64,000 nucleotides of DNA from Selaginella moellendorffii (GCF_000143415.4 NW_003314338.1:1-64000); one strand, 5' to 3'; shown: positions 13,531 to 50,423, counted from the stretch's first letter. Notes: generated from the sequence alone by a model not told the origin. Translations and numbers: made by a program.

Positions 13531-15322
13531 TGTAAGCGACTAATTTTTCCATTCTACTTTAGTCACTTAACCACACCTCCGACCACTTGGAGGAGTCTCA
13601 TTCACAACCTCCATAAGTCCCATTCAGGACATGGGGCTTGCTAGCCTCGAGAATGGCATCCATGCCACTCAACCTTTGCACTTGGTCCAAGTGCTCCACG
13701 TGTCCGATCCCATGACCGACACCCAAAGGTACCACTGACATCTCGGCCCGTTACGCTAAGGCCATGCCCATTCACCTTTGCTGCGCAAATGGTCCAATAC
13801 CACTTGCATCACCATCCCGTCTCTCCAAGACTGGGTCATCTGTCTACGAGGGGTCATCCTAGATCCACTCCTTAGCATCCTTAGGATGCCCACAGACCTG
13901 GGGAATCGCCTTCCCCAAAGTCCTTTTGTCAGTTCCGACCAAGTCCCTTTCTGCCCCTGGCCGTGTTTGCCAACACTGCCACTGGATCGAGGCCCACAGG
14001 CCCGACCACTAAGTCCCACGGTCCTCTGGGACTTCCTCACCACACGACTGTGTCCTTGGTCACTACCCCAGAGGACTGCTCCTCTTCCTTTCCACAGTCT
14101 GGGCCTTTGGGACGACATTTCGGAACACCGTGGCCTTACGCGAGCCACCTGGGTACTCTCCCCACCTATCGCCTTTAGGTGCTCTAGCCATGGGCTTAGA
14201 GCGAGGTTCCGTTGAGCCACGCCTGGTATCCAAGTAGGTAGTGCCACCCACACTTGGACTTGGAGCATCGGCCAGTCGATCTCCCGGGGGAACTAGAGCT
14301 GGCTCTTGAACACTTCACCAAGCTACCCCGCTTGTCGGTCCGTATTCACTCTAGTCTTGGACTTCCCAGTGGTCAGTTTGTCACCCAACACTGGGTCTGG
14401 CCTTCCTGGGCCAAACTGGCTCCCCTGCAGTCCTCCCCCTTACTATACTTTTGGGGCTCACCAAACCCCCTAGGGTCTGGGAGACGAACGCTTTGGGCTT
14501 TCACCCTCTCAGGCGCCGGACTCGGACTCGGACTCGGACTCGGACTCGGACTCAGATTCGGACTCAGATTCGGACTCGGACTCGGGCTCGGGCTCGGTCT
14601 CGGCCTCGGCCTCGGTCTCGGTCTCGGTCCCGATCTCAGTCTCGGTCTCAGTCTCGGTCCCGGTCTCGGTCCCGGTCTCGGTCTCGACTTCGGACTCCAT
14701 CTCGGACTCCATCTCGGACTCCATCTCGGGTCCATCTCGGACTCCATCTCGGGTCCATCTCGGACTCCATCTCGGACTCCATCTCGGACTCCATTTCGGG
14801 TCCATCTCGGGTCCACCTCGGACTCCATCTCGGACTCCATCTCGGACACCATCTCGGGTCCATCTCGGACTCCACTTCGGACTCCAACTCGGGTCCATCT
14901 CGGGTCCACCTCGGACTCCATCTCGGACTCCATCTCGGACTCCACTTCGGACTCCAACTCGGGTCCATCTCGGGTCCACCTCGGACTCCACTTCGGACTC
15001 CAACTCGGGTCCATCTCGGACTCCACTTCGGACTCCAACTCGAGTCCATCTCGGACTCCACTTCGGACTCCAACTCGAGTCCATCTCGGACACTCCCACG
15101 TGTCATGTGTTGGTCCTTTTGGGTCCCTTTTTGGAGCCTCGCCTTTTGCTCGCTTCGTGCTCGTTCCTCGAGCACTTCGTTGGGAGTTCCACTCCCGCTC
15201 TTGACTTTTCAAGTCGGAGCTTTTGGTCCAAACGTGTTACGCTCGTTTGGCTCTCGCTTCGGCCACTACCATGTGGCGCCCTTCCGGCTCCACTTTGGGG
15301 CCTAGGGATTTTGTGTCTCACA
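13531..15322 (-). mobile_element. Family-A solo LTR nested in inverted orientation
   Basis: TGTAAGCG...TCTCACA termini with a perfect TAGGG TSD (13526-13530 / 15323-15327). Confidence 0.92.
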
Positions 15323-16707
15323 TAGGGGGAGGACTGCAGTGGAGCCAGTTTGGCCAGGAAAGGCCAGTTTGGCCTAGGAAGGCCAGACCCAATGTTGGGT
15401 GATGAACTGACCACTGGGAAGTCCAAGACTAGAGTGAATACAGACCGACAAGCGGGGTAGCTTGGTGAAGTGTTCAAGAGCCGACTCTAGTTCCCCCGGG
15501 AGATCAACTGGCCGATGCTCCCAGTCCAAGTGTGGGTGGCACTACCTACTTGGATACCAGGCGTGGCTCAACGGAACCTCGCTCTAAGCCCATGGCTAGA
15601 GCACCTAAAGGCGAAAGGCGGGGAGAGTACCCAGCTGGCTCGCGTAAGGCCACGGTGTTCCGAAATGTTGTCCCATAGGCCTACACTGTGGAAAGGAAGA
15701 GGAGCAGTCCTCTGGGTAGTGACCAAGGACACAGTCGTGTGGTGAGGAAGTCCCAGAGGACCATGGGACTTAGGGGTCGGGCCTGTGGGCCTCGATCCAA
15801 TGGCAGTGTTGGCAAACACAGCCAGGGGCAGAAAGGGACTTGGTAGGAACTGACAAAGGGACTTTGGAGAAGGCAATTCCCCAGGTCTGTGGGCATCCTA
15901 AGGATGCTAAGGAGTGGATCTAGGATGACCGCTCGTGGACAGATGGCCCAGTCTTGGAGAGACGGGATTGTGATACAAGTGGTATTGGACCACTAGTGCA
16001 GCAAAGGTGAATGGGCATAAGCTCTATTTCGTTAAAGTGGGATTTATTCAGTAAAATGGGACTAGGTACAAATTTTCAAGTATTTGAAAATGACGTGAAA
16101 TTATATGTTTTTTGTCCAGGGGCTAGACATATCTGGGGCATGGTGACTAGCGCGGTGACTTTGTGTCCAGACTGAGTCCATCTGGTTGTATAAAAAATCT
16201 CATTGTCAAGGTGAACAAGCCGAATCTGAAGCTAAAGAAGAGCGATGGCATGCGCGCACACACTATTTGTTTGTTCATTGAGCGTGTGGTGAGCTTTCCA
16301 AGATGAACGTCATTCCTATTAGCCAGACATATAACTTAATGGTGAGAACATTTAGATATTATTCAATGTTATCTTTTTCTAACGAATCTAATTGTGAAGG
16401 TGTAGCAAGAGGCATTGCTAGTCTGGAGAAGTCATTTAACTCATTTGACCCTTAGTGTATTTTCATGAAACTAAATAACATTCATATTATTAAGGAATTT
16501 CTCTAGTACCTTTTTTTTACGACATAGAGGCTTGCATTTCTTTCAAAGGTGATTTAGTAAAAGGCCTGAGGGCACATGCCATTCTATTTCTCAGACCGGT
16601 ATTAAGATATACTAGTGCAAAGGGCCACATGCCATCACGCCTCCTCTGATTCAGATTCGGATTGTTCACCTTGAAATAAAATACATTAGAAACTTAGTAA
16701 AGGAATA

Positions 16708-21007: not shown

Positions 21008-21040
21008 GTTTAGGGTTAGGGTTTAGGGTTTAGGGTTTAG
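21008..21040 (+). repeat. Telomere-like TTTAGGG tract inside the transposon
   Basis: GTTTAGGGTTAGGGTTTAGGGTTTAGGGTTTAG is directly visible. Confidence 0.75.
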
Positions 21041-21944
21041 CAATTCAGTAGCTTGATAAACAAGCAAATACAGAACTTGATGCAAAATCCTTTGATATGT
21101 CACAATGCCCCTAGGACCATAAACACATTTCAATAGAGAGGGTCCTTTCATTTCATAACTCCTTACGTAGATCTTGGTGAAACCAGAGTTAGTGAAGTTG
21201 GTTTCTTGTGATCCCGCATCTGATTGTGATGTCCCTTTGCAGTGTCGATGGAAAGGTCAATGCACAACAAACTGTAGAATCTTGGAGCAAAATAACGGTC
21301 GGATCTATGGCAAATGCCCCTGAAACATTGTAAGGCTCGTGTGGTCTCATGTGGTGTCCGATCGAGATGCTTCTTTGCAGGGTCATCAAGAAGGACATTG
21401 TATACCATTCTGTAAAATCTAGTTGCGATCTAACGGTTGGATCTCCAGGAAACTCAAAACAATCTCGCGCGTGTCAGAATATTCTAGGAATATACTCCTA
21501 TGTGCTCCTGAAAATGGCATGCGGCCCCACGCCATTCAAGAGATAACGCCAGATGACGCCGAGCATTTTTTGGTGCATTTTTTGGGATCAAAATTGCATG
21601 AGCCCACATGCTTGAACGTCACATCAAATCCTCTGACAATTTATTTAGCTGAACATCTGGCATTTTTGGAAATACAAGATGCTTTGGAATATCCAATCAT
21701 GCATGGTATAAATATAGCGAGGGTATTAAATGATATCCCAATCATGATCTTTCTTTTGGATTTCGCGTGCATGCAGTCCGAGGAATGATGACGTTGCGGA
21801 TTTCTTTTGGATTTCACGCATGCGCGCGCCGATCCAGAAATTAATGGTGGCGCCCAAGTCCGAGAAATGATGACGTGGCGGGATTACCAACCGTCGTGAC
21901 ATTTCGCGCGTGTGAGGTTAGGTTTTGCATTTTGCTTCGTACTT

Positions 21945-22110
21945 GCGCTCGCACACTCGCGCTCGCATCGCGCTCCCACTCGCGCTCGCATCGCGCTCCC
22001 ACTCGCGCTCGCATCGCGCTCCCACTCGCGCTCCCACTTCTCTACAGGTTTCTCGTGTGCATCGGCGTCCACTCGCGCTCGCATCGCGCTCGTGTGCATC
22101 GGCGTCCACT
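21945..22110. repeat. CpG-rich ~23-bp tandem repeats (CACTCGCGCTCGCATCGCGCTCC) upstream of the cargo gene
   Basis: About five visible units. Confidence 0.8.
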
Positions 22111-22311
22111 TCAAGACACACCCAGTTTGTAACTTCGCCGCCAACTCCGCCGCCCACTCCGCCACCCACACGCAGCCCACTTGGCGTCCCGGGAGATTTC
22201 AGCGCCACTCTCCAACTGTAAGTGGCAGAGTAGCCTTGCTGCTACAATCCGCTGCACACACAGTGCACATTCGCCAGCGAGTCCGGTTGTCACGCCTCCA
22301 TTCGGCTTCAA

Positions 22312-25300: not shown

Positions 25301-27934
25301 TAGACACGAGGACTGAAAAGCGCACTGGTGGCGCATCGAAGAAGGACAAACAGAAAAGCAATAGGAAAAAAGGAGGTACAAATTATATTTGCAATGGCGT
25401 GTGGTCTCATGCCATTCCTTGCAGGAGAAACTTCTTCAAAGGCAAAACAGGCAAGCACCAGCCAAGCTCAAACTGACAGTGGTCATAAAAAGCGAAAGCA
25501 CGTTGGATAGTCGTCGAGATCAGAGGCGTTTGATTCGAAAAGGAAGAAGGGCAACGAAAAGATGATAGGTAATGCCTCGCGGTTATGGTGTGTGTGCTCA
25601 TGCCATTCATTGCAGATCAAGGGCTGAGTGAAAGCAGGCAGTCACCACCTCATGACTCAGATTCCTATGGCGGACTCCCCTTCCCCAATCTCAATGGAGA
25701 GGTACAATGGATGAGGGAAGCTTTTCAAGGCAGGGCCACGTTTTTCTCATCTCGTCGTCTTCGAAGGGTGCAAGAACGTGCAGAAACCATGTTAAGACAG
25801 TCGGGTGAGGATACGGTCCTAGGTCACGCACTAAAACAAGCTATGGATGTCTTGTATTTTGAGATGGAGACTCGGCCAGATGATTTTCCCAAGATGGTCC
25901 TGGAAGAACAAGCCATCCAGCCTGAGCAGCCTATGGAAGAAATGCAGGAGGGGGATGAGGAGCCAGAGAAAGATAATGAGCAAGAAGAGCAGAAGGACAA
26001 AGAGGAGGACAAAGAAGAGGAGGACAAAGAAGAGGAGGACGAAGAGGACTTGGATGGTCCTCACAATGGTGACGATCACAATAACGACGACGACGATGAT
26101 GACGACGATGGCCAGCCTGAGGTGGCCAAAGAGCGGCGGAGGAAGGTCATACAAGACAAACCATCAGGTAAATAATAATACATCCATTCCTAACCTTTTA
26201 CCATTTCTAACATTGTCCATGTAGGTCGCAGAGCAAATGGTAAGTAGAGATTATTCAGTTGAATTTACAAACTCTAGCCTTTAGTGTCGAGGAAGGATAG
26301 TGCCAAGCAAGGGTCGAAACGTATGTCCAATCCTTCAGAATCAGCAGTGCGCTCAAGTGATATCGGTCCTAGTTCCTCAATAGCAGTTGATGGTAAATAC
26401 AGTATAGTCGATTCAATGTGCTAATGAGTTTGTTTTTAGTAGCACGGGAGGATACCATCTCAATCGAAGGGAGATATTTGGACATGCATATGGATCCGCC
26501 AGTGGACTCTACTTGGCTGCAAGAGTCATCAGAGCTGGTGGAGGCTACTATCCATATCAACGCCAAGCAAGCTGACCACGCTCCACTTGATGCTGCCCAT
26601 ACCACTGAGTCAATCTTGTCCACGTATCCAACTGACGGTGACCAGGCGCCATTGGACCCACATGAGGCCGCCCCAGCCGCCGAGCCGGTCGTATCCTCAT
26701 TTCCAATGGACTCAACGTGTGCCCAATCGTCTGACTACGCGCCGTTGGAACCTCCCTACACCGCCCCTGCTGCTTGTTCGGTCATGTCCACTTTGCCAAC
26801 GGAGGCACCAGCTGAAATGGCGTGTGATCACACGCCATCGGAACCACCCCATGCCACTGTTGAGCCAGTTGTACCAGAGTCTACAGCTGAAATGGCATGT
26901 GCCCACACGCCATCGGATGCGATTGACCCCACATTGCAGAGGAGAGTATTTCCGCCCTTCACGTTTCCTCGACCAAAACCCTCTCAACGACCATCGGGAG
27001 CAACATTCGCTAATATTGTAGATGGTAAAATTGACTTGTACCATTTTTTATGCTGACGCATTTCATTTCAGAGTCACGGCGAAGGTACTGTATCGTTTTT
27101 GATCTGAACGGTGTCCTTTTCTCCCATGAGCGTGGCTCGTCCTCGAATGTCATTGCACCCTCCAAAGCCTGCGGTCGCAAGTTGGTCAAAAGAGACAGAT
27201 TCACATTAATCACACGGGAGAAACTGCGGGATCTAATAATGACCATGCGACACTTAAAACAGAGGGCCGGGTTCAATTTGCAATTGGGAGTTTGGACATC
27301 CATGATGCGCCACAATGCATTAACGTTGCTACAGATGATGCACGATCAGACGCGAGTAATATTACCATTTGACTTTCTCCTAACGCAGGAGGATTGCTTG
27401 ACTATGGTCCATGTGAGGGGTAGCAAGCCCATCTTCGTCAAGCCAGAGGCTGTAGTGATGAACCGGACTGCTAGCTCAAGTGAAATCCTCATCATCGATG
27501 ACTCGCCGATTAAAACTGCAGCGAACACGCACACATATGCAGTGCACCCCATCTCTTGCAGTATGGAAACTAGGGAGAAGAAACCGTATGTTCTGGGGGA
27601 CCTTGCAAAATGGCTTGGAGCGATGGTGATAGAGAACCGGCCAGTCCAGGAGGTGGTTGCAGAAATCAACCAAATGGCAGATGGAACGGTATATCAGAAG
27701 CCATTTGATCGGACAGACACCAGTCATCATTTATGGCATGTATATTGTCTAGCCAAGCACTATCCGCATCTCCATAATCTGCTCAACCGGATGGGTTCTT
27801 CGACCACTGAACATGAGCGTGGACGTATTAGAGAAGAGATGGCATTACTATTGGGTTTAAATCCTGATAGTGTGGAGAGTGATGAAATTCCAAGATTATT
27901 GTATAGGCGTTGGAGGCAAAAAATAACAGTCTGA
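22312..27934 (+). CDS. Multi-exon transposon cargo gene (or two genes): ParB/Srx-like domain, degenerate amino-MTase-like region, acidic tract, C-terminal FCP1/SCP-like HAD domain
   Basis: ATG|GT at 22312/22315 and an acceptor at 22553 are in frame with the 864-aa ORF. An in-frame 54-nt intron lies at 23733-23786, and further short GT-AG introns occur from ~25110 onward. Motifs: NHRLVSDEWVEKLK..FYAVSGQHS; VVEYNCGGLFFRAALLKG; IVFDLNGVLF..ILIIDDSPIK. Confidence 0.65.
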
Positions 27935-28705
27935 GATGGCATGTATTTATTTAAAAATGTAACTTATTATGGCATGGTGTTCCATGCAATTGTATTAATA
28001 TTAAAAGACAATTCTTTGAGAGGATTTGCATTATACTAGAAGTGTTACAGCATGTTATTGGAAGTCTACGAAGTTGTTTTATTAATAATGGGAAAGTAAA
28101 GATTGAATGGGGACTTGGGCTCCACCTAGACTCGGAGCAACTGAGCCAATATTAAAAGGATGGAAAGAAATTGGACGACGATGACAAGGAGAAGAGAGAG
28201 GTGAAGCAGTGGCAGGGGGAGGAGAAGTGATTGAGTAGACATTTCCTTGTTTAAAATAAAATGGCATGTGCCTCAATGCAGTTGAATTTTGTTATATTTA
28301 TATACTATATAAAGGTTTGGAAACCTTATTTTACAAGTGGGATAATGACAATTCCCACTTTAACGAAATAGAGCTTGCATGGCCTTAGCGTAACGGGCCG
28401 AGATGTCAGTGGTACCTTTGGGTGTCAGTCTTGGGTCCGGACACGAGGAGCACTTGGACCAGGTGCAAGTGTTGAGTGGCATGGATGCCATTCTTGGGGC
28501 TAGCAAGTCCCAAGTCCTGAATTGGACTGATGGAGGTTGTGAATGAGACTCCTCCAAGTGGTCGGAGGTGTGGTTAAGTGACTAAAGTAGAATGGAAAAT
28601 TAGTCACTTACATGGCCCCGGACATGTTGGGCCCCGGATATGTCCGGCCCCGGACATGTCCGGGCACCCGATATGTCGGGCCCCGGACATGTCCGAGCAC
28701 CCGAT

Positions 28706-31530: not shown

Positions 31531-33448
31531 TTTAGATCTATATTTATATTTGTATTTTATTGGTCGAATTTACTTGGAAATATAGATCAAATTAAAATTT
31601 GAAAAATGGAAAGATGTTGGTTCGGGACGAACCAATGTTTTTCTTGTGTTTGAGAAGCCGTGAGCTCAGCTCGTGAGCTCATGAGCTCAAAACCTACCCA
31701 GGCTCAGTTGATGGTACTTTCTTAACCACAAAATATGACAAGCGCCGATCACTTCCATTCAAAGTCTCGCTGTACATTCATCGAGATTCAAACCGGCCCA
31801 TTGCAAACTCATCCAAAGTAATCCTGGGGCAAGTCTTTGCGCTTTTCTATCTGATTAATACTGCCAGTGGTATCGTCCTTGAGATTGATAATCTCGTTGA
31901 ATGCTTCATGGAAAAAGGATTCCATTGCTATGCATTGAGACGACTCATCCTTAGTGGTCTGGATCGTATCATTCTCACTAGCCCCCTGACACCAGTGCAA
32001 GCAGTCTTGGAAATTCTCTTTGACATCTGGAGAGAACCGGCCAATAGGCCACCACAGCTCGACGACTCAGCAAACTCAAGCTGAGCACCAGGAACTCTGT
32101 CTTCTAGACAGGACTATCCATCACTTTAGCATCATATCGAAATATTATAGATTCGATATTTATGCCTTTTTGGACTGTGAACAACAAAAGAATTAGTTCC
32201 CCAAAACTTACCATACAGTCCTTGGTTATGCGCTGAACTAAAATATGTAAGCGCACCTTTGACTACAACTGTGTTTTGATTGGTAAATCTAAAAAACCAA
32301 CACAAGTTGCTGTTCTCTCATTCTGAGACAGATCCCATGCCTTAATCACAGGAAGGTCTTCCTTAAAAAGAATTTTTAAGGAAACCTTACTTACAGAAAA
32401 CTCATTTTTTTCCCATGAATAAACTAATGGGATACATGAGTAGACGTGGCATGGTAAAAAACAAAACCTTGGATTCCACACAGAATCTCGTGCGAAGAAA
32501 CACGCTGTACGGATAGGCAAACCTAATTACAAGCTATAGCTATTCAGCTTCATGGCTGCAGGCGCTGGATTTTCTCACACCAAAAGGTATGAAGCGACGG
32601 GAAAAACCCTAACGTTAGAGTTTCTCGCTTGCATCCGCCGCCATCACATTCTCCAGGAGCGCATCCACAAGCAGAGCAAGCTTGGGCCGTTGCAAGGCTG
32701 TGCGCTAGCACAACCATGCACACTTCTCGCCCACTCCAGGATCAACAGCCGCTTCGTTGCGCACCACAAGAATGAGCAGCACCAACGAAGTGTTTGTTTG
32801 GGGATAGCTCAAAACAAGCTTACACCCACCACTAAGGTCGCGAGGAATCTCACTACCGCATTCCTGGCCACGCAAAAATGGGTACAAACGATTCGTTTTT
32901 CTGCATTTTTTCACCCTTGGCCTGTAGGAATCTCTCTCGGCCAGAGCGCTGGAACTAAACACCACAGCGACACAAGCGGCTCTCACTGACTCTGCCCAGG
33001 TAGTGCTTGTACTCTTGACTGTTCCAGCTTCTAATCATCTGCTTAGAAAAATGACGGGATGACAGCAACTGGTCCAGACGGCAAGATCCAAGAGTCAACG
33101 GATAGCAATCAAGTTGAGCATGTTCCTTAGTTCTAATCTTTGGAAGTCACTTCGGATGTGCGGCCCGGGCATGTACCTGAGTACATTGGCTCACGAGCAT
33201 CAGTCGTGCAAATCTCAGTTCAGTTTTGAAACCTAGCTTCGTACTTTCACAAAATGAGAGATAGAGCTAGTGGAGATTGCATTACTAATCCTCGTCTTCC
33301 ATGATACAGGTACCCCTTGGACACCCAAACCGTAGGAGGTGACATAGGAATTGCTTAGGGAAGTTGTTTTGGTCGTGGTCGGTACCAGGTTACTAGGCGG
33401 ATGATCCTACACCTCGGACGAATGTACCGAAAACGGCCTAGTCGATCT

Positions 33449-33606
33449 GCTTAACCAAAAATGGCCCATTTGGAGCTCGCATTCATGGCCGGGGCTCAAC
33501 AGAGCAACCCCGGCTGCTTTACCTATTTAAAGTTTGAGAATAGGTTGAGGGTGTTTCACCCCCGATGCCTCTAATCATTCACTTTACCCGATAAAACTCA
33601 GCAAGA

Positions 33607-33638
<32 letters not shown>

Positions 33639-34174
33639 TACCAGCTACTAGATGGTTCGATTAGTCTTTCGCCCCTATACCCAAGTCTGACGAACGATTT
33701 GCACGTCAGTATCGCTACAAGCCTCCACCAGAGTTTCCTCTGTCTTCGCCCTGCTCAGGCATAGTTCACCATCTTTCGGGTCCCAGCAGGTATGCTAACA
33801 CTCAAACCCTTCTCAAAAGATCAAGGTCGGTCCGTGTTGCACCCAAAAGGGGATTAGTTTCCTTTCGCCTGTACGGGTTTAACACCCACAGATTTGCATA
33901 CATGTTAGACTCCTTGGTCCGTGTTTCAAGACGGGTTGGATGGAACGCCCAAGTTCCAGCATCTGGTGGGGCACCGGAGCACCCCGCCATTTTCAGAGGC
34001 AGCGGCGGCATTGGCAGGGAGCCAGAGGTTCACAAGCCGTTATCCTGCCGCGTCCTCCCATGCTGGACAGCCCCTTGCATTGCTTGGCAGACCAGCTCTC
34101 GCCGTTCCACACACAACCAAGTTGCGCATAAGGCATCCATTCGCTTCCCTCCCAGCAATTTCAAGCACTTTTTA

Positions 34175-34219
<45 letters not shown>

Positions 34220-34317
34220 GCGCTATCGGTCTCTCACCAGTATTTAGCCTTGGATGGAATTTACCACCCACTTAAGGCTGCATTCCCAAACAGCCCGACT
34301 CGCCAAAAGAGCCTCGT
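33449..34317 (-). pseudogene. 26S: Orphan 26S rRNA fragment
   Basis: Near-identical to 6790-7548, then continues into LSU sequence (TTTCCCTCGCGGTACTTG...) that is missing from the main unit. Confidence 0.93.
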
Positions 34318-35484
34318 CTGAGCAGCTGCTTCAAGAACTTCAAAAAAAATATACACAAACTAGTAAATAGCACATATTACAGCTACCATAACCTTAAATC
34401 TGTCTGTATAGCCCAGCTGTCTGGCAATTTTATAAAGTACTACAACAACTAAACTCCTGCAACAGTCCAATCTCAATAGTGTTATTATAAACAAGTATAA
34501 GCATGACAATGAAAATATCTTACAATCAGAAACTGCAGTTTTTACCCAAATTAGTTGAGAAACTGGTCTTTACATGTGTACTTAGTGTTATATATTGTAA
34601 AGCATTCCCCTTCTATAATCTTTTGAAAATTTAGAAGTACATGAAAGAAAGCTCAAAGCTAAAAGCAAGGAAATTTTGGGATAGCAGACTTGTGGCAGTT
34701 TGGCTTCATCTTTCTTGGCATTCAACTTCCACAGAAGAAGTTGAGAAGCAGCCAAAGTATTGAAACACATAGAGTCATAAACTTGAGCCTTTTTTAGCAA
34801 GATGCACAAACGCTTGAGCAATGTTTTCCAGATCACTAAGTAAAAAAGAGGTGTTTTAAGCTTGCTTGGAATTTCTTACAAACTTTTGCATACCGATATG
34901 TGTCCTTATATGCCTACAGACATATGATGTTCTTCTATTTGATTCAGCCAAACTAGCGAGCCTTTCTTTCTGTAACATCAAACATCTACAAAGGTTTGTG
35001 TTTTCACTCTTATAATTAATTACTGCAAGCTTTTTAGATTTCAACACATGATTTTGCAATCACTTGCTCAAGTATTCAGGTTCCGTCAGCTTCATTGGAA
35101 ATCGTGTTTTTCAAGTATCTGAGGTCGCTCTCCTTGCAGCAGGCAGCATTCCTCGCACAATCCTGTACACCAAAGCCTCGAATGTATAGAGGCCACTCAA
35201 TAAACTGATACCTGGTAAAAGAAGATCTCGTATCTGCTCATAGATTTGGAGAGCTAAATACAAAAAGAATGAAGGAGGACCAAAAGCGAGAAGACTTCCT
35301 CGTACCGTCTGTGAGAAAAGAAAACCTCAAAAAACAATGTGCCGAGTAACTAGCATTACCCCGAATGCAGCGGCACTCCAGCAATATCTTGCAAAATCCT
35401 CTCTCACAATTCATCGCAGACGCTCCCCAGAACGCTCACAAAATGTACAAAATACGCTGGCCTGTCCACGACGCAGAACGTCTA

Positions 35485-40065: not shown

Positions 40066-40221
40066 TGTGAGTGCTTAGAATATGGAAAGGGAATACAAAA
40101 AATGTGCATATCAATTAACCCAAAAACCCTAGCTTATATACAGGAGTGTGTGGTCCGGATTGAAACTAATATGACAGCTACCAAAATCCCATTATGCTAA
40201 TATTAGTATATGGCATCATAG

Positions 40222-43200
40222 TGTGAGACACAAAATCCCTAGGCCCCAAAGTGGAGCTGGAAATGGTGCCACGTGGTAGTGGCCGAAGTGAAAGCCAAAC
40301 GAGCGTAACACGTTTGGACTAAAAGCTCTAACTTGGAAGGTCGAGAGCGAGAGTGGAACTCCCAACAAAGTGCTCAAGGAGCGAGCACGAAACGAGCAAT
40401 AAGCAAGGCTCCAAAAAGGGACCCAAAAAACACCAACACATGACACGTGGAAGTGTCCGAGATGGAGTCCAAGACGGACCCTAGTCGGAGTCCGAGATGG
40501 ACCCGAAGTGGAGTCTGATATGGAGTCTGAGATGGAGTCTGAGGTGGACCGAGACGGAATTTGAGATGGACCCGAGATGGAGTCCGAGATGGAGTCCGAG
40601 ATGGACCCGAGATGGAGTCCGAGATGGAGTCCGAGGTGGACCGAGACGGAGTCTGAGATGGACCCGAGGTGGAGTCCGAGATGGAGTCCGAGATGGACCG
40701 AGATGGAGCCCGAGATGGAGTCCGAGATGGAGTCCGAAAAGGACCTGAGATGGAGTCCGAGGTCGACACCGAGACCGGGACCGAAACCGAGACCGAGACC
40801 GAGACCGGGACCGAGACCGGGACCGAGGCCAAGGCTGAGACCAAGCCCGAGCCCGAGTCCGAGTCCGAGTCCGAGTCCAAGTTCGAGTCTGAGAGGGTGA
40901 AAGCCCAAAGCGTTCGTCTCCCAGACCCTGGGGGGTTTGGTGAGCTCCAAAAGTATAGTAAGGGGGAGGACTGCAGTGGAGCCAGTTTGGCCAGGAAAGG
41001 CCAGTTTGGCCTAGGAAGGCCAGACCCAGTGTTGGGTGATGAACTGACCACTGGGAAGTCCAAGACTAGAGTGAATACGGACCGACAAGCGGGGTAGCTT
41101 GGTGAAGTGTTCAAGAGTCGGCTCTAGTTCCCCCGGGAGATCGACTGGCCGATGCTCCCAGTCCAAGTGTGGGTGGCACTACCTACTTGGATACCAGGCG
41201 TGGCTCAATGGAACCTCACTCTAAGCCCATGGCTAGAGCACCTAAAGGCGATAGGCGGGGAGAGTACCCAGCTGGCTCGCGTAAGGCCACGGTGTTCCGA
41301 AAAGTTGTCCCAAAGGCCTAGACTGTGGAAAGGAAGAGGAGCAGTCCTCTAGGGTAGTGACCAAAGGACACAGTCGTGAGGTGAGGAAGTCCCAGAGGAC
41401 CATGGCACTTAGTGGTCGGGCCTGTGGGCCTCGATCCAGTGGCAGTGTTGGCAAACACGGCCAGGGGCAGAAAGGGACTTGGTAGGAACTGACAAAGGGA
41501 CTTTGGGGAAGGTGTTTCCCCAGGTCTGTGGGCATCCTAAGGATGCTAAGGAGTGGATCTAGGATGACCACTCTGTAAGCGACTAAATTTTCCATTCTAC
41601 TTTAGTCACTTAACCACACCTCCGACCACTTGGAGGAGTCTCATTCACAACCTCCATCAGTCCAATTTAGGACTTGGGACTTGCTAGCCTCAAGAATGGC
41701 ATCCATGCCACTCAACACTTGCACCTGGTCCAAGTGCTCCTCGTGTCCGGTCCCCAGAACGACACCCAAAGGTACCACTGACATCTCAGCCCGTTATGCT
41801 AAGGCCATGCCCATTCACCTTTGCAGGACTAGTGGTCCAATACCACTTGCATCACAATCCCGTCTCTCCAAGACTGGGCCATCTGTCCACAAGTGGTCAT
41901 CCTAGATCCACTCCTTAGCATCCTTAGGATGCCCACAGACCTGGGGAATTGCCTTCCCCAAAGTCCCTTTGTTAGTTCCTACCAAGTCCCTTTCTGCCCC
42001 TGGCCGTGTTTGCCAACACTGCCACTGGATCGAGGCCCACAGGCCTGACCCCTAAGTCCCATGGTCCTCTGGGACTTCCTCACCACACGACTGTGTCCTT
42101 GGTCACTACCCCAGAGGACTGCTCCTCTTCCTTTCCACAGTCTAGGCTTTTGGGACAACATTTTGGAACATCGTGGCCTTACGCGAGCCACCTGGGTACT
42201 CTCCCTGCCTTTCGCCTTTAGGTGCTCTAGCCATGGGCTTAGAGCGAGGTTCCATTGAGCCACACCTGGTATCCAAGTAGGTAGTGCCACCCACACTTGG
42301 ACTGGGAGCATCGGCCAGTCGATCTCCCGGGGGAACTAGAGCTAGCTCTTGAACACTTCACCAAGCTACCCCGCTTGTCGGTTCGTATTCACTCTAGTCT
42401 TGGACTTCCCAGTGGTCAGTTCATCACCCAACACTGGGTCTGGCCTTCCTGGGCCAAACTGGCCTTTCCTGGCCAAACTGGCTCCACTGCAATCCTCCCC
42501 CTACCATACTTTTGGAGCTCACCAAACCCCCCAGGGTCTGGGAGACGAACGCTTTGGGCTTTCACCCTCTCAGACTCGAACTCAGACTCGGACTCAGACT
42601 CGGACTCGGACTCGGACTCGGACTCGGGATCGGGCTTGGTCTCAGCCTTGGCCTCGGTCTCGGTCTCGGTCCCAGTCCCGGTCTCGGTCTTGGTCCCGGT
42701 CTCGGTCTCAACCTCGGACTCCATCTCGGGTCCTTCTTGGACTTCATCTCGGACTCCGTCTCAGTCCATCTCGGACTCCATCTCAGACTCCGTCTCGGTC
42801 CATCTCGGACTCCATCTCGGGTCCATCTCGGACTCCGTCTCGGTCCACCTCGGACTCCATCTCGGACTCCATCTCGGGTCCATCTTGGACTCCATTTCGG
42901 ACTCCATCTCGGGTCCATCTCGGACTCCATCTCGGACTCCATCTCGGGTCCATCTCGGACTCCGTCTCGGTCCACCTCGGACTCCACTTCGGGTCCATCT
43001 CGGACTCCAACTAGGGTCCGTCTCGGACTCCATCTCGGACACTTCCACATGTCATGTGTTGGTCCTTTTTGGGTCCCTTTTGGAGCCTTGCTTATTGCTC
43101 ACTTTGTGCTTGCTTTTTGAGCGCTTTGTTGGGAGTTCCACTCCCGCTCTCGACCTTCCAAGTTAGAGCTTTTAGTCCAAACGTGTTACACTCGTTTGGG

Positions 43201-46200
43201 CTTTCGCTTCGGCCACTACCACATGGCACCCTTTCCGGCTCTACTTTGGGGCCTAGGGATTTTGTGTCTCACAACTCCACCACCCATAGACGAAGTTCGA
43301 TGTCCTCATCGAACGGTAAACCCTTTTATAAAGTAACACCCGCAGGCATTACCATTCCCATCCTTGGCACCCGGCCAATATTTGTCTATGGTTTGACCCC
43401 GAAGGCTCACCATGCCTTGTCCATCCTCTAAGGAGGATAGTCTCTCCAACTTAAAAACTGATTGGACCACTTGGGGTGGTTCTTTCCGTTTATTGGTTTA
43501 GTTCTCGCTAAACCCGTTAGAGGCACCCTCTCTAACTCAATTCCACTACTCATTCTTGAGTAGTCACAGATTCCATTGATCTACCTTTGCACTTTGGAAC
43601 GTTTACTTTTGACTTCTTGAAGTCAATTTTCTAGGTGTCTCTGACACCTTGCCTTGCACATTTTGTGCAACTCCACTTCCCCTCCTAGGAAGTTCTGTAC
43701 TTGAGGGCACCCTCATCCTCTTTTCTATTTTTGTGCCACCATTGGCGTTACGTTCCATTTATCATTATTTGTGCTAGGGCTACCCATGGCCCTATTATTT
43801 GGCTACCTTACCGCTCCCCTCTTTGGAGCATCCACTTTCGCCAAATCGGAGCGGTTGGGAATCCATCTTTGGGGAAACATTGCCTTTCCCACAATCAATT
43901 AGCACCCAACACATTAGTGTTCTCAGCTTAACTTTGCCATTCGGATTCTTCCCCAAGATTCCCATGGCTCTTTTCTTAGCCACTAGTCTTTTGCTCCTAT
44001 CCTTGATTGTTGCACCTAACAACATCGGATCATTACCTCCATTCTCGAGGTATCGTCTTGATTCCATAGCAAAGACTTTACTTTGCCAAGTCCAAAGGGT
44101 GCTCACCCCTAGTACGTCTCTTTAGCATTTCCTGCTGTGGGCTCTATCCATGACCCAACTTTTGAGACCCTCTCTTGGATCTTTTATAGAGACTACTTTC
44201 CTCGGACTTACTATGCCATAGCAGTGACATAGCTCATTTCCCATAGGTGCTCTTCCCACTTGGTCACCTTGACCAAGCCACACCATTATCAGTAGTTCAA
44301 ATCAACACTTTGAACTAGGAATCATATCTCTTAACCCAAACAAAGACCTTGTCCTTGTTTAGCCACAAGATCACCTAGTGATCTCATCTAGACCCCTTAA
44401 TAAGTCTACCATTAGGGACTAGGTCTTCCAGACCCTTCTAAGTTGTTGACAATGACCCCGGGGGCATCCCCCACACTTGGCGGTGCGCCCAAGCCAGCCC
44501 TTCCGGCCAAGGATCCATAGCAACTAAGACTGGGTGTCCCCATCTCATTCACCACGTCCTTGGTGCTCTTTGCACCAAAGTGTTCAAGTTAGATATGCCG
44601 AGCTTTCACTCTAAGTAATCTAACCGTGCATCACGACTCCGAGGCATCCCTCGCTTGGCGGTGTGCCCAAACCAGTCTCCTCACTGAGAGTCCATGACCA
44701 CCGAAATATGAGTGTCCTCATATTCCAAACCATCACCACGCCCTAGTGATTTGGGACTCGAACCCAAGCACTAGAGGGTTGGGACTCGAACCCAACCTCC
44801 GTATATGCATCTACGGACGGCATCACTGAGGATGCCTGGCGTGACTCCCCACGCCGGTGCACCAACTTATACTCAAAACGCGCTATAGATCACAGCTTAG
44901 GAACCTAGTTCCTCCACACTGCCAAGTCCTCTCACTTGACAAGTATGTGATCATGCATGGACTCCTCCATGCTTGGCCCCATGGCCCACCCTTTTGAAGT
45001 TATCACCTTCAACTAGGGCATTTGTTCTCCTGACTTGCCAATCTCGCTTTGGCAAGTCCTCCGACCACTGTAACATGGTTCCTGCACAAGTGTGAAAGCC
45101 TTTGATCATCGACTTTCGTTCAAAGCCCTCTCTTTGAACACTCGGGAACTACTTCCCTAACCTTGATAGCCTTGCCTCATGGCAAGCTTCAAGACCACGC
45201 TTCTGCTGCGCCACTCTGATTTCGCGTGTTCTTTGAACCATTTACGCTTGGCCTTTCTAGGTACTAAGCTACCTAGAATCATCTTTGGGAACCTTGAAGG
45301 AACTCTGTCCCTTAGCTTGCTAAGGCCTCCCTTTTTGCAAGCTTTCCAATTACCATATAGTCTAACATGGACAATTCCATATTTTAGACTCTCCATGGCA
45401 TCACGGTTGCTAGCAGCAACCCCCTCGAGCCCCCACTTGATTCTCCACTCCCAGCTTGCATAACCAACCTTGGTTATGCCCTTCGATTCCTATGGTTCGG
45501 TTCTACCCCCTTACTTCTTGTCATTCTCCTCCAGACTAGGAGGATAGCTTTGCACTTTCTATCATGCCTTAGCAAGTATTCTTAGGGATGAACCTACCCG
45601 ATAGCCTAGGGAGTGGTTCCTCAATCCAGGTATGCTCACCCTATAATCCCACACACCGAGATCACGTTGTTGCTTATGGGCCTTTACATGCCCATCGCTA
45701 ACCTTGCCAAAATTCCATTTTTGGCTTTGTCCATTTTGAGTAGACAGTCTTCTCCTGTCTCCGCCACCTTGGACATTTGGATAGCACCTTCTATCCATCA
45801 TTCGCTAGGGACTTAGTCCCTTGGGCCTTATCTATTGCCCTCGCAACATCAAACACCACCTCCTAGTGTTCTAGAGCGTTCCAGTGTCCCAATGACGGCT
45901 TCCTTAACAATGAGTATTTCCTTTCATGACATTGACTTACCATATCGCAACATAAGCAACTTATCCCCCGTAAGGGTATATCCAACTTCCTTATGCCATT
46001 AAGAAGGCTTGGGTAGCTACTTTCTACCCGTTTAACCAATTATTTTGCACCTCTTGCTTAGTTGCCTCATAGTTGTCAAGTCCTACAACTCATTGCTGGT
46101 GCTTCCACACCTCCATCATTATCTGGGTCACCACACTCCAACTGCATGCTCTGCAACTTAGGCTATGCCATTCAAATTTCCATTGGGATTCCTTTGGTAA

Positions 46201-49200
46201 GGGGTTCTCATGAACCCACCAACATAGCCTCAAGGTACCACACCTTGGCACATTTGGTGTCTCCACACTATCGGCTCCACGAGCCTATCTCTATGACACT
46301 TTTTCTTTGTGTCTAAGTCTTTGCCAAGACCAATACCGCTCTTTCTCATGCCAACCATCTATTAGCATGGCACCATAGAGGTCACACACAACTTTGTGTC
46401 AAAGTTGTTTTTCTTTTTGGGAACACCTTTCCCACGACTTTAGCACGGCACATTTTGCTATCGATGAAATACCCTCTGTTCTCATCCTTAGATCCTATGA
46501 TCCCCCCCCCCCCCCCCCCCATCCTTCGTGGGGTACAACACACCTCAGTCCAAATGCTCCTATCAGTCCTTTAGGATTATTCCTTGACTCTATTGGAGTC
46601 ATCCAGCTTTTTGGACTTTGTCATCCGACGACCCATGAGGTCCTACCTTTGAGGTGCCAGCTCACTGGAATACAACTTCTTGTATTCATGTCCTACTCAC
46701 AAGGACCATCTTTGCAAGTGTTACTCCGACACTTGATTTGTTCTCTTGGGGCAACCTTTTGCCTCTTAGGACCACTTGTCCATGTGATGAGGATACCAAC
46801 TCATCCTCTAAGTACATCCCCAACTCCTTGGGTTGTTCCAGCATTTATCAAGGGTAACCTCAGCTACCATTTCGAGGACTTGTGTCCTCTCCTATATTTG
46901 ACCTCCCATGGTCATCAATTCCGGTCTCAAAGTTATGAGCACCGGCCTCAACTATATGAGGGTAATCTTGTGACTCCTTTATTATTTTGGAGTCTACATC
47001 TTTCCCATGATCCCAATTATAGTTGTTTACCACAACTACGTTAGCCCGTTTGCTGCGTCAAACGCTCATCTGGATCATATCCTCAACTCTCTGAGGAAAA
47101 CCACATACTGTTCCCAAGATCCCAGAGTCGTTCCATTATTGACCCTTTTCTATCCACCACATCGTGCCCAAGTTCACGCATGAACTTGAGTGGGGAGCCA
47201 TGTCCTCTCGACATGCTACTCCTCAAAGATAGGCCCACTCCTAGGACCTTCCGATGCCAACATCAATGGTGATATACTTGAGCACCAATAAAAGTCGGAC
47301 TAAGGAACAGCTCCGATACCAAGTTGTAAGTGACTAAATTTTCCATTCTACTTTAGTCACTTAACCACACCTCCGACCACTTGGAGGAGTCTCATTCACA
47401 ACCTCCATCAGTCCAATTTAGGACTTGGGACTTGCTAGCCCCAAGAATGGCATCCATGCCACTCAACACTTGCACCTGGTCCAAGTGCTCCTCGTGTCCG
47501 GTCCCAAGAACGACACCCAAAGGTACCACTGACATCTCAGCCCGTTACACTAAGGCCATGCCCATTCACCTTTGCTGCACTAGTGGTCCAATACCACTTG
47601 CATCACAATCCCGTCTCTCCAAGACTGGGCCATCTGTCCACAAGTGGTCATCCTAGATCCACTCCTTAGCATCCTTAAGATGCCCACAGACCTGGGGAAT
47701 TGCCTTCCCCAAAGTCCCTTTGTTAGTTCCTACCAAGTCCCTTTCTGCCCCTGGCCGTGTTTGCCAACACTGCCACTGGATCGAGGCCCACAGGCCCGAC
47801 CCCTAAGTCCCATGGTCCTCTGGGACTTCCTCACCTCACGACTGTGTCCTTGGTCACTACCCCAGAGGACTGCTCCTCTTCCTTTCCACAGTCTAGGCTT
47901 TTCATTTCGGAACATCGTGGCCTTACGCGAGCCACCTGGGTACTCTCCCTGCCTTTTGCCTTTAGGTGCTCTAGCCATGGGCTTAGAGCGAGGTTCCATT
48001 GAGCCACGCCTGGTATCCAAGTAGGTAGTGCCACCCACACTTGGACTGGGAGCATCGGCCAGTCGATCTCCCGGGGGAACTAGAGCTGGCTCTTGAACAC
48101 TTCACCAAGCTACCCCGCTTGTCGGTCCGTATTCACTCTAGTCTTGGACTTCCCAGTGGTCAGTTCATCACCCAACACTGGGTCTGGCCTTCCTGGGCCA
48201 AACTGGCCTTTCCTGGCCAAACTGGCTCCACTGCAATCCTCCCCCTACTATACTTTTGGAGCTCACCAAACCCCCCAGGGTCTGGGAGACGAACGCTTTG
48301 GGCTTTCACCCTCTCAGACTCGAACTCGGACTCAGACTCGGACTCGGACTCGGACTCGGACTCGGACTCGGACTCGGGCTCGGGCTCGGTCTCAGCCTTG
48401 GCCTCGGTCTCGGTCTCGGTCCCAGTCCCGGTCTCGGTCTTGGTCCCGGTCTCGGTCTCAACCTCGGACTTCATCTCGGGTCCTTCTTGGACTTCATCTC
48501 GGACTCCATCTCAGTCCATCTCGGACTCCATCTCAGACTCCGTCTCGGTCCATCTCGGACTCCATCTCGGGTCCATCTCGGACTCCGTCTCGGTCCACCT
48601 CGGACTCCATCTCGGTCCACCTCGGACTCTATCTCAGACTCCATCTCGGACTCCATCTCGGGTCCATCTTGGACTCCATCTCGGACTCCATCTCGGGTCC
48701 ATCTCGGACTCCATCTCGGGTCCATCTCGGACTCCGTCTCGGTCCACCTCGGACTCCACTTCGGGTCCATCTCGGACTCCAACTAGGGTCCGTCTCGGAC
48801 TATAACTAGGGTCCGTCTCGGACTCCATCTCGGACACTTCCACGTGTCATGTGTTGGTCCTTTTTGGGTCCCTTTTGGAGCCTTGCTTATTGCTCACTTT
48901 GTGCTTGCTTTTTGAGCGCTTTGTTGGGAGTTCCACTCCCGCTCTCGACCTTCCAAGTTAGAGCTTTTAGTCCAAACGTGTTACACTCGTTTGGGGTTTC
49001 GCTTCGGCCACTACCACGTGGCACCCTTTCCGGCTCTACTTTGGGGCCTAGGGATTTTGTGTCTCACAACTGACACAGAGATGGACCCGAGATGGAGTCC
49101 GAGATGGAGTCCGAGGTGGACCGAGACGAAGTCCGAGATGGACCCGAGGTGGAGTCCGAGATGGATCCGAGATGGAGCCCGAGATGGAGTCCGAGATGGA

Positions 49201-50383
49201 GTCCGAGAAGGACCTGAGATGGAGTCCGAGGTCGACACCGAGACCGGGACCGAAACCGAGACCGAGACCGAGACCGGGACCGAGACCGGGACCGAGGCTA
49301 AGGCTGAGACCAAGCCCGAGCCCGAGTCCGAGTCCGAGTCCGAGTCCGAGTCCGAGTCCGAGTCCGAGTCCGAGTTCGAGTCTGAGAGGGTGAAAGCCCA
49401 AAGCGTTTGTCTCCCAGACCCTGGGGGGTTTGGTGAGCTCCAAAAGTATAGTAAGGGGGAGGACTGCAGTGGAGCCAGTTTGGCCAGGAAAGGCCAGTTT
49501 GGCCCAGGAAGGCCAGACCCAGTGTTGGGTGATGAACTGACCACTGGGAAGTCCAAGACTAGAGTGAATACGGACCGACAAGCGGGGTAGCTTGGTGAAG
49601 TGTTCAAGAGCCGGCTCTAGTTCCCCCGGGAGATCGACTGGCCGATGCTCCCAGTGCAAGTGTGGGTGGCACTACCTACTTGGATACCAGGCGTGGCTCA
49701 ATGGAACCTCGCTCTAAGCCCATGGCTAGAGCACCTAAAGGCGAAAGGCGGGGAGAGTACCCAGCTGGCTCGCGTAAGGCCACGGTGTTCCGAAAAGTTG
49801 TCCCAAAGGCCTAGACTGTGGAAAGGAAGAGGAGCAGTCCTCTGGGGTAGTGACCAAAGGACACAGTCGTGAGGTGAGGAAGTCCCAGAGGACCATGGGA
49901 CTTAGTGGTCGGGCCTGTGGGCCTCGATCCAGTGGCAGTGTTGGCAAACACGGCCAGGGGCAGAAAGGGACTTGGTAGGAACTGACAAAGGGACTTTGGG
50001 GAAGGTGTTTCCCCAGGTCTGTGGGCATCCAAAGGATGCTAAGGAGTGGATCTAGGATGACCACTCGTGGACAGATGGCCCAGTCTTGGAGAGACGGGGT
50101 GGTGATGCAAGTGGTATTGGACCACTAGTGCAGCAAAGGTGAATGGACATGGCCTTAACGTAACGGGCCGAGGTGTCAATGGTACCTTTGGGTGTCGGTC
50201 TTGGGACCGGACACATGGAGCACTTGGACCAGGTGCAAGTGTTGAGTGGCATGGAGGCCATTCTTGGGGCTAGCAAGTCCCAAGTCCTGAATTGGACTGA
50301 TGGAGGTTGTGAATGAGACTCCTCCAAGTGGTCGGAGATGTGGTTAAGTGACTAAAGTAGAATGGAAAATTTAGTCGCTTACA
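40222..50383 (+). mobile_element. Family-A solo LTR inserted in the Gypsy 3' LTR; interrupted and partly duplicated (40222-41573; 49079-50383)
   Basis: TGTGAGAC...CTTACA termini with a perfect CATAG TSD (40217-40221 / 50384-50388). Confidence 0.88.
41574..49068 (-). mobile_element. Full-length family-A LTR retroelement, non-autonomous (LARD-like): 5' LTR 47325-49068, 3' LTR 41574-43273
   Basis: PBS TGGTATCGGAGC (47310-47321, tRNA-iMet type) and PPT-like ATGGGTGGTGGAGT (43274-43287). The 4-kb internal region has no long sense ORF. Confidence 0.88.
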
Positions 50384-50423
50384 CATAGCCGTATAATTGG
50401 CCCTCACATCATCCCCTCCTCTC

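What the first reader, a model, noticed from the sequence alone, without database searches (positions are those of the whole stretch)
40895..40968. LTR retroelement whose LTR carries a spacing-conserved copy of the rDNA RNA Pol I promoter
Seen: the rDNA promoter (minus 11836-11905) reads GGGTGAAAGCCCAAAGCGTgtGTCTCCCAG-N21-TCCAAAAGTATAGTAGGG. Family-A LTRs read GGGTGAAAGCCCAAAGCGTtcGTCTCCCAG-N21-.CCAAAAGTAT.GTA(A)GGG at 13462-13530, 14436-14506, 40895-40966, 42497-42567, 48241-48311 and 49388-49459. Both blocks and the 21-nt spacing are kept while the spacer sequence differs. The PBS/PPT show the module is in sense orientation, mid-LTR, where the U3/R start belongs. Known: TATA(G)TAGGG is the plant Pol I start, and Cassandra TRIMs carry 5S Pol III promoters in their LTRs. 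Inference: a possibly Pol I-transcribed, nucleolus-adapted LTR element, i.e. a Pol I counterpart of Cassandra. This would fit a non-coding element that needs no capped mRNA.
Basis: partly seen in the sequence, partly recalled or inferred. Interest (0 to 1): 0.92.

Follow-up and report, generated by a model that had tools for sequence, protein, structure and literature searches.

The report
rDNA promoter copy inside retrotransposon LTRs
A non-coding jumping gene of the spikemoss Selaginella moellendorffii carries, in the middle of its end repeats, a complete copy of the start signal of the plant's large ribosomal RNA genes; I found no published case, but RNA reads show these copies almost silent, so use by RNA polymerase I is not shown.

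Summary
A 69-base module lies at 11836-11905 (minus), about 2 kb upstream of the 18S gene. It recurs at all six places named, three on each strand. The two blocks match at 46 of 48 bases and the 21-base spacer at 11 of 21, with the spacing kept (p = 5e-5).

The carriers are real LTRs of 1.7-1.8 kb, with TGTGAG...CTTACA ends and 5-base target duplications. One full element lies at 41574-49068 (minus), with an initiator-tRNA-Met-type primer site and a 4-kb internal part without Pfam hits. The module is in sense, at about 710-830 of the LTR. Likeness to the rDNA stops at the module's edges. The 241-base spacer subrepeats hold an older third version, so the LTR most likely took it from the rDNA.

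New here are raw RNA reads from three runs. Pre-rRNA cover ends between 11691 and 11860, which fits a start near 11839. The LTR stretch downstream of the module has depth 0-1.2, against 6-17 for the 5' ETS. The elements are therefore almost silent in these samples, and neither Pol I nor Pol II use is shown.

This scan found the same thing at least eight times on other DNA of this genome. I found no published description. Verdict: real, probably undescribed, a new variant of the Cassandra idea, mechanism unproven.

The parts
11836..11905 (-). Putative 35S rDNA core promoter: block 1, 21-base G-rich spacer, block 2 ending in TATAGTAGGG. It lies about 2.05 kb upstream of the 18S gene.
   Evidence: RNA cover of the 5' ETS is present at 11691 and is 0 at 11860 and in 12073-12663. 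The motif fits the plant TIS TATATAGGGG (PMC6589552).
3350..4405 (-). 241-base IGS subrepeats, 4.4 copies. Each holds a diverged copy of the whole module (spacer-promoter-like).
   Evidence: They are transcribed in rRNA sense: 230-270 reads in X15 carry their three diagnostic letters and their flanks.
1..865 (+). 3' part (R/U5 side) of a family-A solo LTR, cut by the window start and followed by the 16-base IGS repeats.
12667..13530 (+). 5' part of the solo LTR that belongs to the IGS of the next rDNA unit: U3 with 12/6-base tandem repeats, and the module at 13462-13530.
   Evidence: The left flank CGGCC against TGGCC after 28612 is a 4/5 target duplication inside the 16-base repeats.
13531..15322 (-). 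Nested solo LTR (1792 bases) inserted exactly after the initiator of the host LTR. Module at 14437-14506.
   Evidence: TGTGAG...CTTACA ends and a perfect 5-base duplication TAGGG at 13526-13530 and 15323-15327. A contig of run X1 joins 13525 to 15323, so the empty site exists elsewhere.
15323..16018 (+). Continuation of the solo LTR of 12667 (region downstream of the module). It is cut at 16018 by a DNA transposon (16019-28376) and resumes at 28377-28612.
40222..41573 (+). Left LTR piece (U3, module at 40895-40966, first 548 bases downstream) of a composite insertion spanning 40222-50383.
   Evidence: CATAG lies on both outer sides, at 40217-40221 and 50384-50388.
41574..43273 (-). 3' LTR of the full element. 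Module at 42497-42567, with the initiator mutated to TATGGTA.
43274..47324 (-). Internal region of about 4 kb, non-coding. PPT-like GGGTGGTGGAG at 43275-43285. PBS TGGTATCGGAGC at 47310-47321, 3 bases after the 5' LTR.
   Evidence: No sense ORF of 150 aa or more. No Pfam hit at E of 0.1 or less for eight ORFs. No other copy in the window and no match to the rDNA unit.
47325..49068 (-). 5' LTR of the full element (1744 bases). Module at 48241-48311, LTR positions 758-828.
   Evidence: K2P distance to the 3' LTR is 0.019.
49078..50383 (+). Right LTR piece of the composite. It starts inside the U3 repeats, has the module at 49388-49459, and runs to the LTR end.

Best explanation
SHOWN. Family A is a non-autonomous, LARD-like LTR retrotransposon of Selaginella moellendorffii, with LTRs of 1.7-1.8 kb and a full length of about 7.5 kb. 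It lives in and beside a degenerate rDNA array. Each LTR carries a complete, collinear copy of the 69-base stretch that ends at the start motif of the host's 35S rRNA genes. The copy is in sense, at about 40-48% of the LTR, directly behind roughly 500 bases of 6/12-base tandem repeats.

INFERRED. (1) The module was taken from the rDNA, not the reverse. (2) It marks the U3/R border and serves as the element's promoter. It recruits the Pol I initiation factors, so that a long uncapped template RNA can be made in the nucleolus and then reverse-transcribed by proteins of a coding partner. (3) The copies are kept silent in ordinary tissue.
For: Identity and spacing. Blocks are 46/48 identical against 11/21 for the spacer (p = 5e-5). 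This is the pattern of a two-part binding site kept in both settings. Simple copying or gene conversion would keep the spacer too.

Likeness begins and ends at the module. Beyond it there are only non-collinear hexamer repeats.

The IGS subrepeats carry a third, older version. It shares the spacer motif GTGAGC with the LTR but not with the gene promoter. The module family is therefore old within the rDNA.

LTR anatomy, PBS, PPT and target duplications. Non-coding interior.

Pre-rRNA cover ends at the module's initiator within the resolution available. The initiator fits the plant TIS motif (PMC6589552).

A 7.5-kb element exceeds what Pol III elements reach; Kojima gives 311-1263 bases for the TRIMp3 families (PMC10886601). 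From general knowledge, Pol I copes with such lengths.
Against: Almost no RNA comes from the region downstream of the module: depth 0-1.2 in three runs of 9.2 million reads each, against 6-17 for the 5' ETS. No pile of read starts was reported. The libraries are probably poly(A)-selected and the laid LTR copies differ by 4-12% from their kin, so weak expression could be missed.

Within the family the module is no better kept than the rest of R/U5.

No rDNA terminator-like stretch was found in the LTR, so how a Pol I transcript would end in the 3' LTR is open.

Unchecked notes report coding chromoviruses with the same module. Such elements would need translatable, normally capped RNA.
Confidence: 0.42

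Rival explanations
1. The captured module works in the LTR as an ordinary Pol II core promoter. TATAGTA acts as the TATA box and RNA starts some 25-35 bases further on. The Pol I origin is history, not mechanism.
For: The module's TATA is the only TATA in the nested LTR and one of two in the 5' LTR, so a TATA-dependent Pol II promoter would have to use it. Unchecked notes of coding chromoviruses with the same module fit capped mRNA better. Canonical LTR elements use Pol II (PMC10886601).
Against: A TATA box alone would not explain why block 1, 50 bases upstream, is kept at 28/30 with exact spacing. No LTR transcripts were seen at all, so this reading is as untested as Pol I.
Confidence: 0.25
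2. The module is a passenger. The family lives in rDNA and picked it up, and perhaps refreshes it, by recombination or gene conversion with the IGS, as Pokey's IGS repeats do. It has no role in the element's own transcription.
For: All copies here sit in or next to rDNA. The LTRs are silent. There is no extra conservation of the module within the family. There is a precedent of IGS pieces evolving in concert inside Pokey (PMC3849761).
Against: Conversion would homogenise the spacer too, yet the spacer is 11/21 and the blocks 46/48. The borders coincide with a core-promoter-sized unit. The sense orientation and mid-LTR position are what a promoter needs.
Confidence: 0.17
3. The module serves location rather than transcription. 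By binding Pol I factors it brings the element's DNA or cDNA to the nucleolus or rDNA (homing), or shields copies there.
For: Copies cluster in an rDNA array. One solo LTR inserted exactly at the initiator of another copy, with duplication TAGGG. From general knowledge, yeast Ty elements target polymerase-bound sites through integrase contacts.
Against: In known cases targeting is done by integrase, not by sequences in the LTR. This window has only four insertion events, and one lies in AT-rich non-rDNA sequence.
Confidence: 0.08
4. Reverse direction: the present rDNA gene promoter descends from an LTR that once landed upstream of the 5' ETS.
For: LTRs of this family do insert into the IGS. 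The gene promoter's spacer is the odd one out of the three classes.
Against: No LTR sequence flanks the gene promoter. The initiator matches the pan-plant TIS motif. The IGS subrepeats hold an older, diverged version of the whole module.
Confidence: 0.05

Closest known systems
Cassandra, and the TRIMp3 class (Cassandra, Ajax, Helenus) of Kojima 2024, PMC10886601
   Same: These are non-autonomous LTR retrotransposons whose LTRs carry a promoter taken from a host RNA gene that Pol II does not transcribe. Cassandra tracks changes of the host 5S promoter (PMC10853983). S. moellendorffii itself has a tRNA-type Helenus family.
   Different: Those promoters are internal Pol III promoters (5S or tRNA) and come with the gene body. 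The elements are tiny (311-1263 bases), a size that Kojima links to the weak processivity of Pol III. Here the piece is an upstream Pol I-type core promoter without any rRNA sequence. The LTR is 1.7 kb and the element 7.5 kb. Transcription is shown for Cassandra and not shown here.
Pokey (piggyBac DNA transposon of Daphnia), PMC3849761
   Same: It is a mobile element resident in rDNA that carries non-coding IGS-derived repeats upstream of its own transcription unit, kept like the rDNA spacer.
   Different: Pokey is a DNA transposon. The IGS piece is about 200 bases from a region whose function and transcription start are unknown. It is not the mapped core promoter and is not in a terminal repeat.
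R1/R2 non-LTR retrotransposons of arthropod rDNA
   Same: They are retroelements whose RNA is made by Pol I in the nucleolus (PMC8789037, abstract).
   Different: They have no promoter of their own. They are co-transcribed with the 28S gene they interrupt and are site-specific. Here the element would bring its own Pol I promoter and can sit outside rRNA genes.
Spacer promoters and promoter-derived IGS subrepeats of plant rDNA
   Same: They are duplicated copies of the gene promoter upstream in the spacer, often behind tandem repeats. The window's own 241-base subrepeats are of this kind (Cucurbita Pg/Ps, PMC6589552).
   Different: The family-A copies lie inside units bounded by TG...CA, target duplications and a PBS/PPT. 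They are mobile LTRs, not in-place IGS duplications.

Membership tests
LTR retrotransposon, non-autonomous (LARD-like) | Two direct long terminal repeats ending in TG...CA | tested here: met
   41574-43273 and 47325-49068, both minus, TGTGAG...CTTACA, K2P 0.019.
LTR retrotransposon, non-autonomous (LARD-like) | Primer binding site next to the 5' LTR and polypurine tract next to the 3' LTR | tested here: met
   TGGTATCGGAGC lies 3 bases after the 5' LTR. G-rich GGGTGGTGGAG lies before the 3' LTR; this PPT is only moderately convincing.
LTR retrotransposon, non-autonomous (LARD-like) | 4-6 base target-site duplication | tested here: met
   Nested solo LTR: TAGGG/TAGGG. Composite 40222-50383: CATAG/CATAG. 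IGS solo LTR: CGGCC/TGGCC. The inner full element 41574-49068 has no duplication of its own (CACTC against ACTGA), because it lies inside the composite.
LTR retrotransposon, non-autonomous (LARD-like) | No gag/pol coding capacity | tested here: met
   No sense ORF of 150 aa or more. Eight ORFs of 70 aa or more gave no Pfam hit at E of 0.1 or less.
Cassandra / TRIMp3 | The LTR holds a 5S rRNA- or tRNA-derived internal Pol III promoter | tested here: not met
   Rfam finds no 5S or tRNA in the LTRs. The shared piece is the upstream 35S promoter region.
Cassandra / TRIMp3 | TRIM size (element about 0.3-1.3 kb) | tested here: not met
   LTR 1.7 kb, element 7.5 kb.
Plant 35S rDNA (Pol I) core promoter | Initiator of the TATA(T/G)(A)GGGG type at the pre-rRNA start | tested here: met
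   TATAGTAGGG at 11836-11845(-) and in the LTRs. Motif from PMC6589552.
Plant 35S rDNA (Pol I) core promoter | Pre-rRNA begins there | tested here: met
   For the gene copy only, and at coarse resolution. Sense depth is 11-17 at 11691, 0 at 11860-61 and 0 in 12073-12663 in three RNA runs. Bin means fit an edge near 11839. No exact 5' end was mapped.
Plant 35S rDNA (Pol I) core promoter | RNA begins at the LTR copies | tested here: inconclusive
   Depth is 0-1.2 downstream of the LTR modules, too few reads to place a start.
Plant 35S rDNA (Pol I) core promoter | Bound and used by RNA polymerase I | not testable with these tools
   Needs ChIP, inhibitor or run-on data.
In-place IGS spacer promoter | The copy lies in collinear IGS sequence without mobile-element borders | tested here: not met
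   Every copy is inside a unit with LTR ends and target duplications. Likeness to the IGS ends at the module.

The most novel reading that the evidence does not exclude
These are the first LTR retrotransposons with a Pol I promoter of their own (a 'p1' class beside Kojima's p2 and p3). When derepressed, Pol I would start at TATAGTA(A)GGG in the 5' LTR and make the full-length uncapped template RNA in the nucleolus. The module would co-evolve with the host rDNA promoter, as Cassandra does with 5S.
Probability: 0.35. Interest if true: 0.9.

Novelty: new variant of a known kind. Interest (0 to 1): 0.68.

Why it matters
LTR retrotransposons are textbook Pol II elements, and the known exceptions borrow Pol III promoters and stay tiny. 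An LTR family that brings its own Pol I promoter would be a third route. It would allow long templates, escape from Pol II-directed silencing, and a life cycle tied to the nucleolus.

Each copy in an rDNA spacer would also be a potential antisense Pol I promoter. The IGS copy here points away from the gene promoter, back into the neighbouring unit's 5S and 25S genes in antisense. This bears on rDNA silencing and on array decay.

The case is directly testable by 5'-end chemistry, Pol I ChIP and inhibitors. Even if the module is used by Pol II or not at all, it defines a two-block, fixed-spacing candidate core promoter for a lycophyte.

Tried and rejected
1. In-place IGS duplication or palindrome. 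I considered this because the copies come in inverted pairs. I rejected it because each copy lies in a unit with TG...CA ends, target duplications and, once, a PBS/PPT.

2. rDNA unit as cargo between two LTRs. Window 1-865 and 12667 onward flank the unit. I rejected this because there is no PBS after 865, and the LTR of 12667 has its own 3' end at 28612 with a matching flank. It is one solo LTR per IGS in a tandem array.

3. Apparent RNA depth at 11876-12072, 13058-13254 and 14634-14830. This is not promoter or LTR expression. These reads carry the three diagnostic letters and the flanks of the 241-base subrepeats, and they were laid in pieces (tables 3, 5, 5c and 7).

4. Search for a Pol I terminator or any other rDNA piece in the LTR or the interior: none found.

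5. Poly(A)-signal hexamers in the LTR: none of the four tested. About 1.5 would be expected by chance, so this is not informative.

6. Extra conservation of the module within the family: not seen with seven copies.

7. Metagenome scan for block 1: 0 hits.

8. Run X1 is only guessed to be RNA. It behaves like DNA, so it was used only for the empty-site joint.

I kept the 18S and 25S genes out of the laid stretch.

Full report
WHAT THE WINDOW IS

Rfam places one complete rDNA unit on the minus strand: 5S at 1814-1932, 25S from 4526, 5.8S at 7523-7660 and 18S at 7981-9790. There is also a broken 25S piece at 33427-34446. The 5S gene lies in the spacer (L-type unit). Notes of this scan name the genome as Selaginella moellendorffii. 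I did not test that independently.

THE OBSERVATION

- Block 1 recurs exactly at the six places named. It also recurs with one mismatch in each of four 241-base IGS subrepeats. None was found in 100 shuffles.
- Block 2 recurs at the same seven places with 0-1 mismatch.
- An alignment of all eleven copies (A1) shows the same layout in all. The subrepeat version is one base shorter.
- Between the gene promoter and the LTR, the blocks are 46/48 identical and the spacer 11/21 (Fisher p = 5e-5).

WHAT CARRIES THE COPIES

A self-comparison and the junction sequences give a unit of 1700-1792 bases. It begins TGTGAG and ends CTTACA. Its parts are:

- about 235 unique bases;
- about 500 bases of 12- and 6-base tandem repeats;
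- the module;
- about 920 further bases.

Two copies in the same orientation (41574-43273 and 47325-49068, minus; K2P 0.019) enclose 4 kb. That interior starts 3 bases after the LTR with TGGTATCGGAGC. From general knowledge this is 11 of 12 bases of the plant initiator-tRNA-Met primer site. The interior ends with a G-rich tract before the 3' LTR. It has no sense ORF of 150 aa or more, no Pfam hit and no likeness to the rDNA.

So this is a non-coding, LARD-like LTR retrotransposon. The module is in sense at LTR positions about 707-830.

Other copies are as follows.

- A solo LTR sits in the IGS (12667-13530, 15323-16018, 28377-28612). It inserted in the 16-base repeats, with flanks CGGCC/TGGCC. 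It points away from the gene promoter.
- The same LTR tail followed by the same 16-base repeats appears at 1-865, so one solo LTR belongs to each spacer of this array.
- A further solo LTR is nested exactly behind the initiator of the first, with a perfect duplication TAGGG.
- A composite spans 40222-50383, bounded by CATAG on both sides.

HOW FAR THE LIKENESS TO THE rDNA GOES

Collinear likeness is limited to the 69-base module. Outside it, only GAGTCC-type hexamer repeats recur, and in other positions: downstream of the start in the rDNA, upstream of the module in the LTR.

The 241-base subrepeats are a third and more diverged version of the whole module. They share the spacer motif GTGAGC and the GGGGGA after the initiator with the LTR, not with the gene promoter.

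The module family is therefore old inside the rDNA, and the LTR copy looks like a capture from it. The reverse direction would leave LTR sequence around the gene promoter, and there is none.

RNA EVIDENCE (NEW)

I laid window 10300-16200 against three raw, stranded RNA-seq runs of 2026 (9.2 million reads read from each) and one contig run.

(a) The 5' ETS is covered in rRNA sense at depth 6-17.
- At 11691 the depth is 17, 11 and 16 in the three runs.
- At 11860-61 it is 0, and from 12073 to 12663 it is 0.
- The mean of bin 11679-11875 (13.8 in X15) is what an edge near 11839 would give. The other two runs lie below that figure, as expected for cover tapering towards a transcript end.
- This fits a pre-rRNA start at the predicted initiator. 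It is a coverage edge and not a mapped 5' end, because no pile of read starts was reported.

(b) The 230-270 reads per run at 11872-11905 are not from the promoter. They carry the subrepeat letters at 11876, 11885 and 11886, and subrepeat flanks on both sides. The subrepeats are therefore transcribed in rRNA sense, more strongly than the 5' ETS.

(c) The LTR regions downstream of the modules (13531-14436 minus, 15323-16018 plus) have depth 0-1.2. The few reads are poor matches. The family is nearly silent in these samples.

(d) Every ETS read differs from the window at 11 positions between 10826 and 11691. This unit is therefore not the expressed rDNA variant, which fits a TE-ridden array edge.

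Caveats: the libraries are probably poly(A)-selected, the laid LTR copies differ by 4-12% from their kin, and reads cannot tell caps from triphosphates.

MECHANISM

Points in favour of a working Pol I promoter in the LTR:
- the unit kept is the size of a core promoter and ends at the start motif;
- the blocks are kept while the spacer drifted at fixed length;
- the module has sense orientation and a position where U3 meets R;
- a tandem-repeat array lies just upstream, as in spacers;
- the interior is non-coding, and its 7.5-kb length is beyond Pol III elements.

Points against:
- the copies are silent;
- the module shows no extra conservation within the family;
- no terminator was captured;
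- unchecked notes report coding chromoviruses with the same module.

The module's TATA is almost the only TATA in the LTR, so a Pol II reading that uses it as a TATA box is a serious rival. I put Pol I use at about 0.4, Pol II use at 0.25, passenger at 0.17, homing at 0.08 and the reverse direction at 0.05.

COMPARISON WITH WHAT IS KNOWN

- A 2024 review of rDNA and transposable elements lists 5S-promoter SINEs, Cassandra, Ajax, SINE28 and Pokey. It lists no element with a 35S/Pol I promoter (PMC10946416, Table 2).
- Kojima 2024 divides TRIMs into p3 (Pol III) and p2 (Pol II) and reports a tRNA-type Helenus in S. moellendorffii (PMC10886601).
- Pokey carries IGS repeats that evolve with the spacer (PMC3849761).
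- Four further full-text searches found no description of a Pol I promoter in an LTR.

The library lacks most subscription journals, so 'undescribed' is provisional.

EARLIER NOTES OF THIS SCAN

The same phenomenon was reported and followed up at least eight times on other pieces of this genome. All concluded that it is real and that there is no RNA evidence. This report adds four things: the read data; the third (subrepeat) class and the direction argument; the block-against-spacer test; and the anatomy of this window's copies.

VERDICT

The LTR reading is supported. Pol I use is plausible but unshown, and the copies are silent in three RNA libraries. It is a new variant of the Cassandra/TRIMp3 idea. 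Interest 0.68.

Noticed in passing
window 40217-50388: A single pair of CATAG duplications bounds a composite. It holds an LTR(+) cut at base 548 after the module, then a whole element in the opposite orientation (41574-49068), six odd bases, then an LTR(+) starting inside its U3 repeats. It looks like one integration of a strand-switched product, like the scrambled concatemer noted 12 kb beyond the window (s1-411644).
   Followed up: partly
window 13526-15327: A solo LTR of the same family inserted exactly behind TATAGTAGGG of another copy (duplication TAGGG), that is, at the putative start site. A contig of run X1 shows the uninterrupted form.
   Followed up: partly
window 10826-11691: All RNA reads on the 5' ETS differ from the window at 11 positions. 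This rDNA unit is therefore not the expressed variant and is probably a silent copy at a decaying array edge.
   Followed up: partly
window 3350-4405: The 241-base IGS subrepeats downstream of 25S, each a degenerate promoter copy, are transcribed in rRNA sense. There are 230-270 reads over a 34-base match, which is more per copy than the 5' ETS. This could be read-through from 25S or spacer-promoter transcripts.
   Followed up: partly
window 16019-28376: A 12.4-kb DNA transposon with terminal inverted repeats AGCTCTATTTCGTTAA / TTAACGAAATAGAGCT sits inside the IGS solo LTR. Its 1022-aa ORF has a DUF7869 domain, and another ORF has a weak NIF phosphatase hit.
   Followed up: partly
window 7810-7925 (-): A 5S-rRNA-like stretch inside ITS1, below the Rfam threshold (31.3 bits against 38).
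   Followed up: partly
window 866-1545 and 12446-12666: The IGS around the solo LTR consists of 16-base repeats (27.8 copies) flanked on both sides by 45-62-base repeats containing CACGTG (G-box-like) motifs.
   Followed up: no
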